The notes below the pieces were generated by a model. It saw nothing but the letters and a program-made list of their open reading frames with translations, did not search any database and was not told where the DNA came from. A stretch of 64,000 nt of DNA from Octopus bimaculoides (taxonomy: Eukaryota): contig NC_068984.1 of NCBI RefSeq assembly GCF_001194135.2, positions 20,869,117-20,933,116 of the forward strand, in the 5' to 3' direction. A program made the position numbers and the translations under genes. Below are positions 25,028 through 64,000 of the stretch, in pieces. Within the stretch, counting starts at the first letter, position 1, and every line of letters starts with the position of its first letter.

Positions 25028-25805
25028 ATATTTATTCTTATTACGTCTAGACAGTTTCAGATGCAAAATATGTTTATTGCTGTTATTTAGGAGAATAACT
25101 TTTCTTTTATGACGAGAGCGCGATTAACACACATCGAATTCTGGGACACCGGTATTTCGATATGCTGTGTCTAGTCAGTCAGAAGCACCCGAACCATTGA
25201 GGCTAAACCGAGCCGCTGGCTTTGTTTATACTTTCAGCGAACAAATTGTTTGCTGATCAGTGCTTATATCTGTCATCTGATAATTAAAAAAATCGTTATT
25301 TGCACCGTGTAGAGCAAGATCTGGAACGAATATTTGCATATTTATTCTTAATACGTCGAGTCAAGATCATATGCAAAATATGCTGGTGGCTGTAGTGTAT
25401 GTCACGAGAGAATAACTTCTCTCTTTTACGACAACAAACTGTTCAACGCTCTCGATTCATTGGTGCAAGGGATTCTGGTACAAAGGTGTCTCGACTGCTG
25501 TACACGATGCAAATAGCGATTTTTTTTATCGGTTGGTCGATAGAAGCACCGATCATAAAAAACAGTTTGTTCGCTGAAAGTATAATCAAAGCCAGCAGCT
25601 AGGTTTAGGCTCAATGGTTCGTATGCTTAAAGCTGATGAGACACAACACATCGAAACACTGATGTCTCAAAATCCTGTGCGCTTTGAACCAAGTGTGTTA
25701 AACATACAGTCGTCGTAAAAGAGAAGTTATTCTCCTGTGACGTTGAACATATTTTGCGTCTGAACCTGCATATTTATTAAGAATGAATATGCAAATATTC
25801 GTTCT
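25028..25805. repeat. Nested inverted repeats (Penelope pseudo-LTR-like) with two decayed hammerhead motifs
   Basis: 25028-25315 is an inverted diverged copy of ~25490-25790; 25325-25440 is an inverted copy of ~25700-25805. Hammerhead-like motifs at 25139-25184(-) and 25627-25672(+). Confidence 0.75.
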
Positions 25806-43172: not shown

Positions 43173-44629
43173 AAAACATTAATGAATTTTTAAGAAACTG
43201 AAAGCATACATATATAATTATTGGTGCACTCGGGATTGTTAGCAAACGTCTAGTGCCAATCTGGAAAAGGTAGGATTTACAGGCAAATGAAGAATAAATA
43301 AATAAATAAAATAAATAAATAAAAGGGACTGGTTAGCCTGCACTTTACAAGTCAATTTGCAAATGGAACGGTAAAAATATGCAAAAATTTTCAACATGTG
43401 ACATTTAACGCTGTTGTATTGCAAATTCCGGGATGAAGATATACATACAGATGTACATATATAGCACTTAAATACTAAAGAGACATGTACACAGTGCAGG
43501 TGCAAACCCTGAAAACTGTTTTGTTTTCACTTTGTTAGTGAATGACTTGTAACTCTATTAAGAACTTAAATAAATCTCGAAGAAAAGCATTCTTTCACAC
43601 AAATACATACACATACTTATCCCCACTTAAACGTGGATGTCCCGTTAGAACAAACTATACTGTGGTAGGTGCAATGGAAGAAAGTCTCATGTTGACTTTT
43701 AGTGTAAAATGTACTCTTGTTTATATCGCTAGCGGTCGAGCGTCCATCACTGATAAAACCAAAGAAGGTCGAAATAACGTGATTTGGTGTCTCGGTGCAG
43801 GAGATGTACATACACACATACATACATACATGCATACATACATACATACATAATACATACATGCATACATACATACATACATACATACATACATGCAGAC
43901 AGACAGACAGACAGACAGACATATATACATACATACACTTACGAGCAAGAAGGATCATTTACACGCCACCATCCGAAACAAAATATTGGACTGTTTGTTG
44001 AATTGTTGTTGGTTTAGGACTGCTTCCCCTAGTTATATGTATCATCTAGATTCCACACTCACAACACAGTATTCACGTTAACATTGTTTAGCCACATAGG
44101 TCCACCCTAATCGGGTAAACCTATAATAAAATACGTCCAAACCGTAACCATCACATATTTTTGTATATTCAGATCTCGATTGTTCAATGTGCTATTTCTT
44201 TTGTAAGATTTTTTCTCAGAAAAGTATTTTGCTATTTTTAGCAGTTGTCACTTGTTTGTTTAGCCTCAGATCACCCCAAATCAAAGGTTATTCCAGTTGT
44301 GGGCATCCTGTCATTATAGAAATATATAGGACTACGCTGACTATTATGACCTTCTTTATTGGAAGAAAAATATGATGATTTCATGAGTACTTTTTGCAGA
44401 TTGGGCAAGCCGGTTGCGGAACCTACACTGGCTTGACGTTTATGGAACTGACGATATTAATGCTACCTGATTTGGCAGTGACGTGGTTTTGGCAGCCCTG
44501 TGCGGTAGCCAAATTGGCCGCTTCCTTAAACGTAACATACTTTCAACAAAATCAAACGTGCGTTTATAATAAACCGGACACCGGTTGACCTTAACCAGTT
44601 GAGCATGTCCCTTAGTAGTTAACGATATG

Positions 44630-46305
44630 TTCATCTATGATTCCTTTTCAGTTGATGCCAAGAACATGTTTTCCAATGGCTATTGTGAATCCATATCACT
44701 ATTCAACAAGGCCAAAGACATAATCATTGTTGGTCTTTACAGGCCTCCCCAAGCACCTCTAAAGTGCTCTGAAGAGTGCCTCAACAAAATCAATTCCTTC
44801 CTTCAAAAATACAACTCCGGAAACATACTAGTGATGGGTGATTTTAACCTCCCTCATATAAACTGGCCCATAAATACTCTGAAGTTAGGCAAATGCTCTA
44901 CACCTGACAAAGCAGCAGCAGAATTACTCTTTAATCTGCTGGATGATTTTTTCCTGACTCAGCTAGTGCTAGAACCAACAAGACAGAATAAAACGACCTT
45001 GGATCTAATATTAACCAACCACTCTAGCTCCGTTCACAGTATTTCAGTTGAAAAAACTCTCCTCTCAGACCACGACATAATACTCTGCAACTTTAATTTC
45101 TGGTATACCAAAACCAAACCAGCCAATCGCACTCCATTGCACTTATTTGACAAGATAAACTGCCACAAAGCGGACTGGGGAGCAATCAGAAAGAATCTGT
45201 CCTTGATCGATTGATCCTTCACTTTCAGTTCCACTGACATTGAGACCGCACGGCAGCACTTTGAGGACATTGTCACCTTATACATGCTCAAAACACGCTG
45301 TTACGAAATCCACTAACACAAACAGAAACCGGCTCCCTAGAACGAAGAAAAATACTCATCAGGCGCATCAAAAGACTTAATTAAAAAAAATCAACTAATT
45401 AAAATACTCCCACGTACAACATCCACATTCAACAACAATGAAAAGGCTAGAGTTGGAAAAACTTCATCTGCAGACCGACATGAAAACCTCCATTGAAAAT
45501 CAAAGAGCTGCAAAGGAACAGTGGGTAATCAAAAAAATCGAACAGAACCCAAAAGTGTTCTATTCGATGATAGCGGCATTCCCCAACACGATGCTAAAGA
45601 AATGGCAGAAGTACTGCAGAAACAATACTGCTCTGTCTTTAGTGACCCCACTGATATTGACGTAAGGGAAGCGAACGAAGTTGATTCCCACATGAAATCT
45701 CGGACATAACCTTCACTGCCTCAGACATCACAGCAGCAATAAATGAGGTCAAATACTATTCTGCTGTAGGTCCTAATAGATTCCCCGCTAGTCCCCTGAA
45801 AGAATGTAGACACCAACTTACAGTCCCTCTGACCAACCTTTGGAGAAATTCTTAAGACTCAGCTCCTACCCAGTCTGTCATTCCGGTTTTCAAACAGGGA
45901 AACAGATCCCTCGCAGTCAACTATCGCCTAATCTCATTCACCTCCCACATCATTAAAGTGTTTGAAAGAGTGGTAAGATCAAGGACAGCTGGCTTCCTGG
46001 AGATCCACAAACTCCTAAATTTAAACCAGCATGGCTTTTGTTGTGGCAGGGACTGTCTAACACAGCTCTTACGCCAACCACATCGATGATATACTTAAAG
46101 CCTTGGGAACAGGTTCAAACTCTGAAGTCTTATATCTTGACTTCAGTAAAGCGTTCGACAAAGTTGACCATAGTATCTTACTCTCAAAATTGGCAAATGC
46201 TGGAATCCGTATAGAACACTTCTGCATTGGATTCAGTATTTCCTGGCGAACAGAACACATGTTGTGGTCGATGGAGTCGCCACATTTAAACTCAACATTT
46301 AAACA
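44630..46305 (+). pseudogene. CR1/L2-type LINE ORF2 fragment (APE endonuclease plus N-terminal RT), frameshifted and truncated
   Basis: YRPP, GDFNLP, LDLILTN, SDH APE motifs in ORF 44627-45214; downstream IPVFKQG..NYRLIS..QHGF and YLDFSKAFDKVDH. Confidence 0.9.
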
Positions 46306-46499: not shown

Positions 46500-46547
46500 T
46501 TTAGTCAAATACGTATAATTAGATTAGTGTGTTTAATTGTTGAGTTT

Positions 46548-46640
46548 AAATGGCCCAGTGGTTAGGGGCAGCGGACTCGCGTTCGGAGGATTGCGGTTTC
46601 GATTCCCAGACCGGGTGTTGTGTGTGTTTATTGAGCGAGA
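46548..46640 (+). mobile_element. tRNA-derived SINE head (not a tRNA gene)
   Basis: TGGCCCAGTGG A-box and GGTTTCGATTCCC B-box, no acceptor stem closure, runs into GTTGTGTGTG body sequence. Confidence 0.65.
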
Positions 46641-46936
46641 ACATACACGTACGTGTGTATGTATACATGTATGTATGTGTGTGTGTATATATGCACGAAC
46701 ACGACAATACTTGCCTAAGTATTAATCTTCCTTTCACCTTCTACTCTCTTTTTCTTCTAAGTAGTTACGACAGCGAAAGCTGATTACGTCATTTTATCTA
46801 AACTTGAACGTATGCTTTCTATGCTCATATTTTTGCGTTTATCATATTTTCTGCTTTTATTCATTCTTGAACTTGATGGGCATATAACAGCAAGTCAGCA
46901 GACATTAAAAATCTCTAGTGAGACTTCTTTATCAAT

Positions 46937-46981
46937 GTACCTGAAGAGACCCAGACTGATGGGTCGAAATATATGTTGTAT
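46937..46981 (+). ncRNA. Minimal type I hammerhead ribozyme motif (slightly decayed)
   Basis: GUAC-CUGAAGA-GACCC-agacugau-GGGUC-GAAA-UAUAUG-UU-GUAU: intact core boxes, 5-bp stem II, 4-bp stem I with one G.U; the sister copy has C at the first stem III position, implying CAUAUG. Confidence 0.65.
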
Positions 46982-47028
46982 CTAATAAAAAGTCTAATAC
47001 GAAATCTCTCTCCTACTATTAATTAATA

Positions 47029-47062
<34 letters not shown>

Positions 47063-47344: not shown

Positions 47345-47871
47345 TTTTATTTAAACTTGAACGTATGCTTTCCACGTTCATATTTGAATTTTTTGCGTTT
47401 CTATAATATTTTTTTGCTTTTATTCATTCTCAAACTTGATGAGCATATAACAAGCCAGCTGATGTTAAAATCTGTTGTGAGATTTCTTTATCAATGTACC
47501 TGAAAAGACCCAGACTGATAGGTCGAAACATACGAAATCCATCTCCTACTATTTATTAATACTATATATATACATATATACATATATACATCTATGAGTG
47601 CATGTCCTTGTGTCCGTGTTTGACTCCCATCACCGCTTGACAACTGGTGTTGATGTGTTTACATCCCAGTAACTTAGCGGTTCGGCATAAGATACCGATA
47701 GAATAAGTACTATGCTTAAGGAATAAGTCCTCGGATCAATTTGTTCAATTAAAACCCTTCAAGGCAGTGCTGCAGTATGGCCGCAGCCAAATGACTGAAA
47801 CAATTAAAAAATAAAACAATCATAGAACATGTGTGTGTATGTGTGTGTGTGTAAATATATATATATATATA

Positions 47872-48237
47872 TATAAAGAGAGAGAGAAAGATAAAGAGAC
47901 CAATGGCAAAGTTAGAAATATATTTTATGGATAAAGTCTTACAGCTGTTTCAGGGAAAATCCAATGTATCCCTTCATCGGAGACGGTAATAGTAGAGGAA
48001 TAGATTATTACATCTATAAGAGGAGATTTGTAGTAAGAAGTGAGAGCGATGCGCTGAAAAAAGAACAAAGAAGAAACAGTACTTGGAGCGTAGCTTTTGC
48101 TTGTAATAATCTATTCTACTATTACCGTCTCCGATTAAGGGATACATTGGATTTTCCCTGAAACAGCTGTAAGACTTTATCCATAAAATATATTTCTAAC
48201 TTTGCCATTGGTCTCTTTATCTTTTTCTCTCTTTATA
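47872..48237. repeat. Near-perfect ~135-bp inverted repeat with 89-bp spacer, each arm carrying a hammerhead-like motif
   Basis: 47872-48012 vs 48102-48237, only a few differences; motif at 47936-47984(-) and 48127-48175(+). Confidence 0.9.
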
Positions 48238-48593
48238 CATACACACGCTAATACACGACAGGCGCAAGACTAGCCGGTATATAGCACTTACTCGGTATTA
48301 CCTGTATCTTTGGGTTTGGTTGAATCCAATACCCTTCATAACCTATATATATGTATATACANNNNNNNNNNNNNNNNNNNNNNNNNNNNNNNNNNNNNNN
48401 NNNNNNNNNNNNNNNNNNNNNNNNNNNNNNNNNNNNNNNNNNNNNNNNNNNNNNNNNNNNNNNTATATATATATATATATATATGTAAGGATTTTTAATC
48501 CAATGTATTATATTGTACGTATGAATTTGCTTCGAGACACATACTTCTCACAAACGTTTATACGTAGATATAACACGCGCATGCGCGCGCTTC

Positions 48594-62731: not shown

Positions 62732-64000
62732 TATCAGGTCATCCCATAAGTTCTGTCCGAATTTTCTCATCGCAGATCGGTGGCTATCGGACGCTGACGA
62801 AGGGAAATAACCCTGAAACTCGAGTCCATTCGTGCTACAGATCACGATGAGAGGGATAACTTCCCTTGGCAAAACAAACAGGACACAGAAGTGTGTCGAT
62901 AAGCCAGCTGGAGGAGATGTCCTCCTGGGGCTAAAAACAACAGTAACATCCACCCCTAGGGGTCAGCCACATTTATGTGGCAATATACTTCACTTTATCG
63001 TGCAGTTACTGTTAATACCTCATTTAGAGAATTAACATTAAGTGATCAAATGTTATATTTAATTGAAATTTAATCATCATTGTGCTTTCCCTGATTATCT
63101 ATGACTTTCTTCCATCTATTTACAAGCGTTTTAATCCCATCAATATAAAACTCTTTTGGTTTCAAAGCGAAGAATTCTGAAATGTCAGTTTCGACCTCCT
63201 CTTGGCTTGCGAAAGTTATGTCCCCCAAATGATTCTGTAAACTACGAAACAAATGGTAGTCTGAAGGAGCAAGGTCGGGAGAATAAGGTGGATGAGGAAT
63301 TTTTCCCAACCAAGATCTTCGATCTTCTGTGATGTGATCTTTGCAGTGTGGGGGTCACGCATTGTCCTGATGAAACATCACTCCTTTTCAATTCACTAAA
63401 GCNNNNNNNNNNNNNNNNNNNNNNNNNNNNNNNNNNNNNNNNNNNNNNNNNNNNNNNNNNNNNNNNNNNNNNNNNNNNNNNNNNNNNTGGTAACAATTCA
63501 AAGTGAATTACTCCTTTGCAATCCCACCAGATAGAGAGAAGAACCTTTTTCCCATGAAGTTCCCTTCTCGGTTGTGGTTGAGCTTTCCCCCTTTTACCAA
63601 GCCACTGTTTACGACGTTTAACATTTCGATAGAAGATCCATTTTTCCTTATCAGTCACAAGTCTATCCAAAAAGGGTGAAATGAGTTCGCGAGAATGGAG
63701 AGAAGAGCAGATGTCAACTCGGGATTTGCGGCTGCTTTCGTGCAATTCATGAGGCACCCATTTTCCAAGTTTAGGAACCTTTCCAAGTTGTTGAAGATGA
63801 CGATGAATAGTTGTGGGGTTTGAACTTAGCTTTATTGCCAATTCTTCAACTGATAATGCAGGATTTTCTTCCATTAATGCCTCAAGGAGCTTATCATCAA
63901 ATTCAACTGGACGTCCTGTTCGATCTTCATCTTCAAGGCTGAAATCTCCACTTCTGAAACCGACTGCGTCTAAGAGAGTTGCATTGAATGCTGAAGTACA
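62732..64000 (-). mobile_element. Mariner (DD34D) transposon, inactive, runs off the window end
   Basis: WVPHEL and HPPYSPDLAPSDYHLF motifs; first catalytic segment VTGDEKW mutated to VTDKEKW; stop and frameshift near 63310-63360; TA plus TIR-like TCAGGTCATCCCATAAGTTCTGTCCG at 62732-62759. Confidence 0.9.
62788..62832 (+). ncRNA. Minimal type I hammerhead ribozyme
   Basis: CGGACG-CUGACGA-AGGG-aaauaa-CCCU-GAAA-CUCGAG-UC-CAUUCG: complete core, 4-bp stem II, palindromic stem III, GUC cleavage triplet (after 62826), stem I 5 of 6 pairs. Confidence 0.8.

What the first reader, a model, noticed from the sequence alone, without database searches (positions are those of the whole stretch)
62771..63018. 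248-bp hairpin-rich, hammerhead-bearing insert inside the mariner end: candidate retrozyme-like element
Seen: between the mariner stop (63070) and its TIR (62732-62759) lies a 248-bp segment flanked by CTCAT direct repeats (62766-62770, 63019-63023). It holds a complete hammerhead core (62788-62832; GUC site; palindromic CTCGAG stem III) and a second hammerhead-like remnant (ACGATGA-G-AGGGA..TCCCT, 62844-62866). It also has GACACA-gaag-TGTGTC, GGAGGA-gatg-TCCTCC, palindrome ACCCCTAGGGGT, GCCACA-ttta-TGTGGC and a 9-bp stem 62939-62947/63005-63013, and no coding signature I recognise. Established: minimal type I hammerheads with palindromic stem III act as dimers and mark Penelope pseudo-LTRs and metazoan non-LTR retrozymes (small structured circRNAs). 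Inference: a non-autonomous self-cleaving retroelement monomer that inserted into a DNA transposon, possibly an undescribed cephalopod family.
Basis: partly seen in the sequence, partly recalled or inferred. Interest (0 to 1): 0.8.

Follow-up and report, generated by a model that had tools for sequence, protein, structure and literature searches.

The report
Hammerhead-ribozyme retroelement copy inside a mariner
A dead mariner transposon carries a ~250-bp insertion that looks like one unit of a retrozyme, a known class of small self-cleaving, circle-forming animal retroelements; this is a normal fossil for an invertebrate genome, and no second copy could be found to confirm a family.

Summary
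All listed features sit at the stated coordinates.

- **Hammerhead motif:** 62794-62826 (+) has a complete type-I core, CUGACGA / GAAA / GUC. Helix II is 4 bp, helix III is 2 bp plus tetraloop inside the 8-nt palindrome ACTCGAGT, and helix I pairs 5 of 6. A structural descriptor finds 2 such motifs in the window, against 0.002 expected per shuffled window.
- **Insertion:** Two relatives of this mariner have 105 and 78 nt from stop codon to element end. The window has 336 nt, so a ~250-bp insertion is real.
- **RNA structure:** The + strand folds far better than shuffles (z -3.7).

Two points change.
- The "second hammerhead remnant" CGATGAG is the 3' strand of a helix that pairs with CTCATCG and extends helix I into an 88-nt arm.
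- The left CTCAT therefore probably belongs to the element. The pentamer repeat fits a slightly more-than-one-unit copy of a 253-nt circular or tandem template as well as it fits a target-site duplication.

Weak points: no Rfam hammerhead hit, an A10.1-U11.1 pair instead of G-C, only E=0.11 with an independent model, one copy, and no tandem array.

Best reading: an inert solo unit of a retrozyme or Penelope-derived element. It is a new member of a known kind, and the host taxon is unverified.

The parts
62732..62733 (.). TA dinucleotide flanking the mariner end (mariner's own target-site duplication)
   Evidence: Direct reading. The same TA follows the terminal inverted repeat in relative L001.
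62734..62759 (-). 3' terminal inverted repeat of the mariner (TCAGGTCATCCCATAAGTTCTGTCCG on +)
   Evidence: Aligns at 85-88% to both terminal repeats of the full-length relative L001.
62760..62765 (-). Mariner subterminal spacer (AATTTT on +), alignable to AAAAAC in L001
   Evidence: Manual alignment of the 3' ends printed.
62766..62770 (+). Left CTCAT. It is part of the helix CTCATCG/CGATGAG at the base of the ribozyme arm and is probably element sequence.
   Evidence: I15: 62765-62772 / 62845-52, 8 nt, 100% complementary; fold.
62771..63018 (+). 248-bp inserted segment. With one CTCAT it makes a 253-nt unit. Sense strand is +, antisense to the transposase.
   Evidence: Absent from relatives. 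GC 0.48 versus 0.17 in the flank. Fold z -3.74 linear. Circular fold z -3.54 for 248 nt and -5.72 for 253 nt.
62765..62852 (+). 88-nt ribozyme arm. Helix I is extended by 5-, 4- and 7/8-bp segments separated by small internal loops, closing on the three-way junction.
   Evidence: MFE -33.4 kcal/mol, with all outer helices predicted.
62794..62826 (+). Type-I hammerhead core with helix II and helix III. Predicted cleavage lies between C62826 and C62827.
   Evidence: descriptor, 0.002 expected; independent model, 14.3 bits, E 0.11.
62818..62825 (+). ACTCGAGT, a perfect 8-nt palindrome spanning helix III. It could form an intermolecular helix III in a ribozyme dimer.
   Evidence: Direct reading. 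Same design as mussel ACGCGCGT, axolotl ACACGTGT and coral ACAGTACTGT. Cofold dimer -70.5 versus -66.8 for two monomers.
62853..62866 (+).
   Evidence: Folds. No C3/U4 and no GAAA box.
62882..62933 (+). Two hairpins: GACACA/TGTGTC (62882-62897) and AGCC..GGAGGA/TCCTCC..GGCT (62902-62932)
62939..63013 (+). Branched domain closed by the 9-bp stem AACAGTAAC/GTTACTGTT. It contains ACCCCTAGGGGT and GCCACA/TGTGGC.
   Evidence: (I10).
63019..63023 (+). Right CTCAT (target copy, junction microhomology or terminal redundancy)
63024..63069 (-). AT-rich mariner 3' UTR between the stop codon and the insertion
   Evidence: Aligns to L001 and L008. GC 0.17.
63070..64000 (-). Mariner transposase pseudogene. 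It has in-frame stops, an assembly gap at 63403-63487, and runs off the window.
   Evidence: Pfam PF01359. 80-83% DNA identity to L001 and L008.

Best explanation
The segment is a single, circularly permuted unit (253 nt counting one CTCAT) of a non-coding retroelement that carries a hammerhead ribozyme. It belongs to the class of metazoan non-LTR retrozymes, which are thought to derive from the terminal repeats of Penelope-like elements. It was reverse-transcribed into the 3' UTR of a mariner copy, antisense to the transposase.

**Shown**
- It is an insertion relative to mariner relatives.
- It has a complete type-I hammerhead with the invertebrate-retrozyme design.
- The ribozyme sits at the tip of an 88-nt arm.
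- The + strand RNA is unusually stable.

**Inferred mechanism in an active source copy**
- Multimeric + strand transcripts pair two ribozymes through the palindrome ACUCGAGU and cut after C17.
- A host ligase closes the unit into a circular RNA.
- A reverse transcriptase supplied in trans, most likely from a Penelope-like element, copies the circle.

**Inferred for this copy**
- The element ends lie 56 nt from the cleavage site rather than at it.
- The insertion is one unit plus 5 nt.
- The left CTCAT is part of an RNA helix.
- Together these fit one turn of copying on a circular or multimeric template, with CUCAU microhomology at the junctions, better than insertion of a self-cleaved linear monomer.
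- With one ribozyme, a 2-bp helix III and a more stable alternative fold, this copy is probably inert.
For: **Insertion**
- Stop codon to outer end of the terminal repeat is 336 nt in the window, 105 nt in L001 (80-83% identical, full length) and 78 nt in L009.
- GC is 0.48 in the segment and 0.17 in the flanking UTR.

**Hammerhead**
- All invariant core positions and all three helices are present.
- The descriptor finds 2 hits in the window against 0.002 expected. It recovers 3 of 4 experimentally validated retrozyme ribozymes.
- The 2-bp helix III with a palindromic tetraloop, the 4-bp helix II and the 6-position helix I match the published mussel, coral and axolotl retrozyme ribozymes. The literature calls this helix III design 'similar to invertebrate HHRs' (PMC7229834; PMC4209133).
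- A covariance model built only from three published retrozyme ribozymes ranks the motif 4th in the window, at 14.3 bits and E 0.11. It finds three more hammerhead-like sites at 15-21.7 bits. In 16.5 kb of other animal contigs nothing scores above 7.5 bits. Hammerhead-bearing repeats are therefore common in this genome.

**Structure**
- z = -3.74 on + versus -2.17 on -.
- The circular 253-nt unit has z = -5.72. A validated coral retrozyme has -3.32.
- The 7-8 bp helix CTCATCG/CGATGAG extends helix I coaxially.

**Agreement with the class description**
- Size, GC below 50%, absence of LTR/PBS/PPT features, and a flanking repeat longer than 4 bp all agree with PMC7229834.
- Dispersed solo monomers are reported for such families (bioRxiv 10.64898/2026.07.22.740005).
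Against: - Only one copy is available. There is no other copy in the window. Nothing was found in the protein, metagenome, prokaryote-genome or viral collections. Repetitiveness, tandem arrangement and conservation of the core are untested.
- No tandem repeat exists at the locus.
- Rfam hammerhead models give no hit even at E<=10 on 116 nt.
- The independent model gives only a marginal E of 0.11.
- The 10.1-11.1 pair is A-U. G-C is described as highly conserved (PMC4209133).
- Helix I has a C.A mismatch.
- The hammerhead fold of the arm is 8.6 kcal/mol less stable than its MFE fold.
- The empty-site comparison rests on one same-family locus and one distant relative. A second same-family copy (L008) has unrelated sequence after the UTR.
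Confidence: 0.55

Rival explanations
1. The segment is a fragment of an autonomous Penelope-like element: a 5'-truncated 3' end or a piece of a terminal repeat, carrying that element's own hammerhead. It would not be a dedicated non-autonomous retrozyme.
For: - Penelope-like elements carry type-I hammerheads in their terminal repeats, near the 3' end. They mostly occur as truncated single motifs and give target-site duplications of variable length (PMC4209133; PMC8557442).
- Retrozymes and these terminal repeats are reported to be phylogenetically interleaved.
- Several other hammerhead-like sites in the window sit next to microsatellites or in inverted pairs, as described for these elements.
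Against: - The ribozyme has the canonical retrozyme design: 4-bp helix II, and 2-bp helix III with a tetraloop.
- No reverse transcriptase or GIY-YIG coding remnant adjoins it, because both flanks are mariner.
- The pentamer redundancy and the closed 253-nt fold fit a unit-length circle.
Confidence: 0.2
2. The insertion is unrelated DNA, such as another kind of transposon fragment or filler DNA captured during repair. On this reading the hammerhead is a chance match in a hairpin-rich sequence.
For: - No Rfam hammerhead hit.
- E 0.11 with the independent model.
- A-U at positions 10.1-11.1 and a C.A mismatch in helix I.
- My descriptor thresholds were fixed after I had seen the motif.
- A genome of a few Gb would hold on the order of 100 chance matches at 0.002 per 60 kb (inference).
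Against: - The expectation is 0.002 per window, and several hammerhead-type motifs occur in the same 64 kb. True motifs therefore outnumber chance ones by orders of magnitude.
- Features the descriptor did not require are also present: the palindromic tetraloop, helix I continuing for 16 more base pairs, and the + strand bias of folding energy.
- The segment has no terminal inverted repeats, no LTR ends and no Helitron ends (direct reading).
Confidence: 0.12
3. The segment is native to this mariner subfamily's 3' UTR and was deleted in the lineage represented by L001.
For: - Only one same-family copy has an intact 3' end for comparison.
- The other same-family copy, L008, is rearranged in the same region.
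Against: - L001, at about 1.26 kb, and the more distant L009 both have the usual short mariner 3' end of 105 and 78 nt.
- There is a sharp GC discontinuity.
- A direct repeat sits exactly at the junctions.
Confidence: 0.06
4. The segment is a Pol III SINE that happens to contain a hammerhead, like the Schistosoma Sm-alpha elements, inserted as a linear RNA by LINE machinery. The comparison with Sm-alpha is from my own knowledge.
For: - It is short, non-coding and structured.
- A LINE with an APE endonuclease and a tRNA-like SINE head are present elsewhere in the window.
Against: - No tRNA, 5S or 7SL similarity was found (ARAGORN; Rfam).
- There is no A-rich or microsatellite tail at either end.
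- A 5-nt repeat is short for LINE-mediated insertion (own knowledge).
Confidence: 0.07

Closest known systems
Metazoan non-LTR retrozymes (Cervera & de la Pena 2020, PMC7229834), e.g. mussel Mg353 and coral Amil224
   Same: - Canonical type-I hammerhead: 4-bp helix II, helix III of 2 bp plus a palindromic tetraloop (mussel GAAAC-GCGC-GUC, here GAAAC-UCGA-GUC), and a 6-position helix I.
- Non-coding unit of 170-400 nt with GC below 50% and no LTR/PBS/PPT features.
- Strongly self-paired RNA. The circular fold z-score is comparable to or better than the coral control.
   Different: - A single unit at this locus instead of a tandem array.
- A10.1-U11.1 instead of G-C, and a mismatch in helix I.
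- No sequence similarity outside the core to the published units.
- No evidence of expression, circular RNA or copy number.
Minimal hammerheads in the terminal repeats of Penelope-like elements (Cervera & de la Pena 2014, PMC4209133)
   Same: - Type-I topology, palindromic helix III and expected action as dimers.
- Mostly found as dispersed single motifs from truncated copies.
- Variable target-site duplications.
   Different: - Those motifs typically have a 7-8 bp helix II, a 4-5 bp helix I, an unpaired nucleotide 5' of helix II, and little or no helix III.
- Here helix II is 4 bp with no extra nucleotide.
- No Penelope-like ORF lies nearby.
Hammerhead-bearing satellite and SINE-like repeats of newts, schistosomes and cave crickets (cited in PMC7229834; details from own knowledge)
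   Same: Short repeats carrying type-I ribozymes with a weak helix III that cleave efficiently only as dimers.
   Different: Those are high-copy tandem or Pol III-driven families with demonstrated cleavage. Nothing of the kind is shown here.
Plant LTR retrozymes (PMC4918200)
   Same: Non-autonomous, hammerhead-processed elements with circular RNA intermediates.
   Different: Plant retrozymes have type-III ribozymes inside LTRs, PBS/PPT features, 4-bp duplications, 600-1000 nt units and high GC. None of these is present here.

Membership tests
Hammerhead ribozyme, type I | Catalytic core CUGANGA ... GAAA ... UH with A15.1-U16.1 | tested here: met
   CUGACGA 62794-62800, GAAA 62815-18, U16.1 at 62825, C17 at 62826.
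Hammerhead ribozyme, type I | Three helices around the core, helix I open-ended | tested here: met
   Helix I pairs 5 of 6 and continues for 16 more base pairs. Helix II is 4 bp. Helix III is 2 bp plus a tetraloop.
Hammerhead ribozyme, type I | G10.1-C11.1 base pair (highly conserved) | tested here: not met
   A62801-U62814. Conservation is stated in PMC4209133.
Hammerhead ribozyme, type I | Match to the curated Rfam hammerhead covariance models | tested here: not met
   No hit at gathering score or at E<=10 on 401 nt and 116 nt. The best hammerhead-like site in the window by my own model also gets no Rfam hit, so sensitivity for short-helix-III variants is doubtful.
Hammerhead ribozyme, type I | Self-cleavage at the predicted site | not testable with these tools
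   Requires in vitro transcription of monomer and dimer constructs.
Metazoan non-LTR retrozyme | Canonical type-I hammerhead with short palindromic helix III | tested here: met
   ACTCGAGT palindrome. The architecture equals the mussel, coral and axolotl constructs.
Metazoan non-LTR retrozyme | Tandem repeats of the unit (dimers to multimers) | tested here: not met
   One unit plus 5 nt at this locus. No TRF array and no second copy in the window. Solo monomers are known for such families.
Metazoan non-LTR retrozyme | Unit of about 150-450 nt, GC below 50%, no LTR/PBS/PPT, non-coding | tested here: met
   248/253 nt, GC 0.48. No protein similarity.
Metazoan non-LTR retrozyme | Highly self-paired RNA | tested here: met
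   z -3.74 linear and -5.72 circular for 253 nt. Coral control -3.32, mussel control -0.99.
Metazoan non-LTR retrozyme | Multi-copy family expressed as circular RNA | not testable with these tools
All collection scans were empty.
Penelope-like element (terminal repeat) | Hammerhead inside direct repeats that flank an RT plus GIY-YIG ORF | tested here: not met
   Both flanks are mariner sequence. A truncated fragment cannot be excluded.
Penelope-like element (terminal repeat) | Minimal-hammerhead design: long helix II, extra nucleotide 5' of helix II, helix III absent or 1 bp | tested here: not met
   Helix II is 4 bp with no extra nucleotide, and helix III is 2 bp plus a tetraloop.
Plant LTR retrozyme | Type-III hammerheads in LTRs, PBS/PPT, 4-bp duplication | tested here: not met
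   Type-I topology, no terminal direct repeat longer than 5 nt.
tRNA/5S/7SL-derived SINE | Pol III head related to a small RNA, plus an A-rich or simple-repeat tail | tested here: not met
   ARAGORN found none. Rfam found none. No tail is present.
Mariner (host element) | Transposase with the mariner DDE domain, about 28-bp terminal inverted repeat, TA duplication | tested here: met
   Pfam PF01359. The terminal repeat matches both ends of full-length L001. TA lies at 62732-33. The element is a pseudogene with in-frame stops.

The most novel reading that the evidence does not exclude
The insert would be a one-turn, more-than-unit-length cDNA of a 253-nt retrozyme circular RNA from an undescribed family in this genome, which may be a cephalopod. 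The family would still be expressed elsewhere in the genome. The clean filled-versus-empty site inside a mariner, with a 5-nt terminal redundancy that is part of the RNA structure, would then be junction-level evidence for how animal retrozymes integrate: rolling-circle reverse transcription with microhomology at both junctions. So far that step is only hypothesised in the literature.
Probability: 0.15. Interest if true: 0.6.

Novelty: new member of a known kind. Interest (0 to 1): 0.3.

Why it matters
Hammerhead-bearing retroelements occur in thousands to over 100,000 copies in many animal genomes, so one more copy is not surprising. What this locus offers is context: the element sits inside a recognisable transposon whose relatives give the empty site, so both junctions can be read. 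The ends are permuted relative to the cleavage site, and the 5-nt repeat is part of the RNA fold. If other copies confirm a 253-nt unit, this is the footprint expected from copying a circular or multimeric RNA, and it would bear on the unproven integration step of animal retrozymes. The window also shows that this genome holds several decayed hammerhead families, which is useful for repeat annotation.

Tried and rejected
**Searches that found nothing useful**
- Rfam at gathering score on the whole window, and at E<=10 on 401 nt and 116 nt, gave no hammerhead. It returned only chance snoRNA-like hits in the AT-rich UTR. A further search on the site at 43741 also gave nothing.
- BLASTN of the segment and the mariner against the window found no second copy.
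- Six-frame translations of the segment, joined into one query against 5.8 billion proteins to catch spurious ORFs from other copies, gave no hit at E<=10.
- The hammerhead pattern scanned against JGI metagenomes and viral contigs, and the mariner terminal-repeat pattern scanned against metagenomes and prokaryote genomes, gave 0 hits.
- Contigs for transposase hits P0001, P0004 and P0012 are only distant mariners, so they served only for the UTR-length comparison.
- A LINE ORF search meant to identify the host returned unnamed proteins. The SRA run numbers are not in the literature library. The taxon is therefore unverified.

**Ideas considered and dropped**
- Homology between this element and the other hammerhead-like repeats in the window: none beyond the core.
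- Terminal inverted repeats, TG..CA LTR ends or Helitron ends on the insert: none seen by direct reading.
- The loose-pattern hit at 25633 is not a hammerhead. It lacks helix II and is an internal CTGATG repeat.
- The fourth published ribozyme (Ax330) was left out of the model because MAFFT misaligned it.
Full report
**1. What is in the sequence**

- CTCAT lies at 62766-62770 and 63019-63023.
- The motif at 62794-62826 on the + strand reads CUGACGA-AGGG-AAAUAA-CCCU-GAA-A-C-UCGA-G-U-C.
  - This gives all invariant hammerhead positions: C3 U4 G5 A6, G8 A9, G12 A13 A14, A15.1-U16.1 and C17.
  - Helix II is 4 bp.
  - Helix III is 2 bp plus a tetraloop, and lies inside the perfect 8-nt palindrome ACTCGAGT.
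- Helix I (62788-62793 with 62827-62832) forms 5 of 6 pairs, with one C.A mismatch.
- The other hairpins and the 9-bp stem 62939-47/63005-13 are present.
- A joined six-frame translation of the segment found nothing among 5.8 billion proteins.

**2. Is the hammerhead more than chance?**

- I wrote a structural descriptor: core boxes, at least 4 bp in helix II, at least 2 bp in helix III with a loop of 8 nt or less, and at least 5 of 6 pairs in helix I including 1.1-2.1.
- It finds two sites in the window, 62794 and 46941. In 1000 dinucleotide-preserving shuffles the mean was 0.002 sites per window.
- It recovers three of the four experimentally validated retrozyme ribozymes printed in the supplement of PMC7229834. 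The fourth fails because of its known U.U pair in helix II.
- I fixed the thresholds after seeing the candidate, so I also built a covariance model from the coral, mussel and axolotl-353 ribozymes only.
  - With filters off, the candidate scores 14.3 bits and E 0.11, which is marginal.
  - Three other sites score higher: 43741-43793 (21.7 bits, E 8e-4), 47989-47931 on the minus strand (15.5 bits) and 46936-46982 (15.0 bits).
  - In 16.5 kb of other animal contigs nothing exceeds 7.5 bits.
- Hammerhead-type motifs, mostly decayed, are therefore frequent in this genome. That makes a chance origin of the one complete motif unlikely.
- Against this, Rfam reports no hammerhead at its gathering score or at E<=10 on 401 nt and 116 nt. 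It also misses the 43741 site, so I treat this as limited sensitivity for short-helix-III variants. I could not calibrate that.
- The A10.1-U11.1 pair departs from the G-C pair described as highly conserved (PMC4209133).

**3. Is it an insertion?**

- The transposase on the minus strand is a mariner pseudogene (Pfam PF01359).
- Two proteins from the homology search lie on contigs 80-83% identical to it at the DNA level.
  - L001-L007 are one locus seen in seven sequencing runs.
  - L001 is full length, with both terminal inverted repeats. These match 62734-62759 at 85-88%.
- From stop codon to the outer end of the 3' repeat, L001 has 105 nt, the more distant L009 has 78 nt and the window has 336 nt.
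- In the alignment of the 3' ends, the window's extra sequence lies between ...ATTCTCTAAATGAG and AAAATTCGGACAG... on the mariner sense strand.
- GC is 0.48 in the segment and 0.17 in the adjacent UTR.
- The insertion reading is therefore well supported. The caveat is that only one same-family copy has an intact end, and the other (L008) is rearranged there.

**4. Two corrections to the anatomy**

- TCTCATCG (62765-62772) is perfectly complementary to CGATGAGA (62845-62852) (I15).
- Folding 62765-62852 gives an 88-nt arm. In it, this helix, GAUC/GAUC and GUGGC/GCUAC stack below the proximal helix I, separated by small internal loops (MFE -33.4 kcal/mol).
- So the CGATGAG of the supposed second hammerhead remnant is the 3' strand of an extended helix I. 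AGGGA-UAACU-UCCCU is a separate hairpin. There is no C3/U4 and no GAAA box.
- The left CTCAT is built into the RNA structure of the element.
  - If it were merely duplicated target DNA, five specific bases would complete a coaxial helix by accident, at about 1 in 1000 (inference).
  - The circular fold improves from -76.7 kcal/mol (z -3.54) for 248 nt to -85.8 kcal/mol (z -5.72) for 253 nt.
- The pentamer may therefore be terminal redundancy or junction microhomology rather than a classical target-site duplication. This cannot be settled from one copy.

**5. How it most likely works**

- The ribozyme has the design that PMC7229834 describes for invertebrate retrozymes: two base pairs in helix III capped by a tetraloop. 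Compare mussel GAAAC-GCGC-GUC with GAAAC-UCGA-GUC here.
- Such ribozymes are weak as monomers and cleave as dimers through the palindromic helix III (PMC4209133; PMC7229834).
- In silico:
  - The catalytic fold of the monomeric arm is 8.6 kcal/mol above its MFE fold.
  - Two arms are predicted to dimerise through the palindrome region, at -70.5 against -66.8 kcal/mol.
- The unit size, GC below 50%, lack of LTR/PBS/PPT and strong self-pairing also fit the class. The + strand folds better than the - strand, which points to RNA-level structure.
- Inferred life cycle, following the published model:
  - Source arrays are transcribed.
  - Ribozyme dimers cut after C17.
  - A host ligase closes the unit into a circle.
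  - A reverse transcriptase supplied in trans, most likely from a Penelope-like element, copies the circle.
- At this locus the ends lie 56 nt upstream and 192 nt downstream of the cleavage site. The template was therefore not a self-cleaved linear monomer. One turn around a circle or multimer, plus 5 nt, fits best.
- With one ribozyme and no tandem partner, this copy is probably inert.

**6. Rivals**

- A fragment of an autonomous Penelope-like element is the closest rival (0.2). The two classes are reported to be interleaved phylogenetically. The ribozyme design and the closed unit favour the retrozyme reading.
- Chance motif in unrelated inserted DNA: 0.12.
- SINE with a hammerhead: 0.07.
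- Native mariner UTR: 0.06.

**7. Limits**

- No second copy could be retrieved. The window has none, and the protein, metagenome, prokaryote-genome and viral scans were empty.
- The host could not be identified.
- Family status, tandem arrays, covariation, expression and cleavage remain open.

**8. Verdict**

The best reading is a solo, permuted unit of a hammerhead-bearing retrozyme or Penelope-derived retroelement inserted in a mariner 3' UTR.
- It is a new member of a known kind and of modest interest.
- The one feature worth following up is the junction anatomy, which bears on how such elements integrate.

Noticed in passing
window 43741-43793 (+): Decayed canonical type-I hammerhead: CUGAUAA core (G8 to A) and a near-palindromic helix III, AUAACGUGAU. 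It is the best hit of the model built from published retrozyme ribozymes (21.7 bits, E 8e-4). It lies about 10 nt before an (ACAT)n microsatellite. Rfam does not report it.
   Followed up: partly
window 46800-47030 and 47353-47560 (+): Two copies of one short repeat, each ending in a microsatellite. Both carry CCUGAAGAGACCCAGACUGAUGGGUCGAAA, which is a hammerhead core plus a 6-bp helix II. Only the first copy completes a full hammerhead (46941-46977), and only because of a 24-nt insertion. The second copy has G8 to A and no cleavage site.
   Followed up: partly
window 47870-48241: Foldback or MITE-like element with 127-nt arms that are 96% complementary, set between microsatellites. Each arm holds a hammerhead-like string, CCGAU(G/U)A-AGGGA...UCCCU-GAAAC-AGCU-GUA. 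It has U4 to C and a palindromic AGCU loop.
   Followed up: partly
window 44627-46300 (+): Remnant of a non-LTR (LINE) retrotransposon. An intact 195-aa APE endonuclease ORF (Pfam PF14529, PF03372) is followed by frameshifted reverse-transcriptase fragments. The remnant is cut off at an AT-rich microsatellite.
   Followed up: partly
window 46545-46620 (+): tRNA-like SINE head (GGCCCAGTGGTTAGGG...GGTTTCGATTCCC), followed by a microsatellite. ARAGORN does not call it a tRNA.
   Followed up: no
window 63000-63092 (-): Weak C/D-box snoRNA-like Rfam matches (snoR31, SNORD61 and others; E 0.35-9, about 20 bits against gathering scores of 43-52). They lie in the AT-rich mariner 3' UTR and transposase end, and are most likely chance.
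   Followed up: no
L008:1122-2085 (ENA ERZ25070786 contig): A second same-family mariner copy, 81-83% identical. It loses homology about 50 nt after its stop codon and has no terminal repeat in the next ~960 nt. It appears to have a different insertion or rearrangement in the same 3' UTR region.
   Followed up: no
whole window: Twelve assembly gaps totalling 3868 N, and very dense di-, tri- and tetranucleotide microsatellites. Overall GC is 0.38. No convincing host protein-coding exon was seen among ORFs of 110 aa or more.
   Followed up: no
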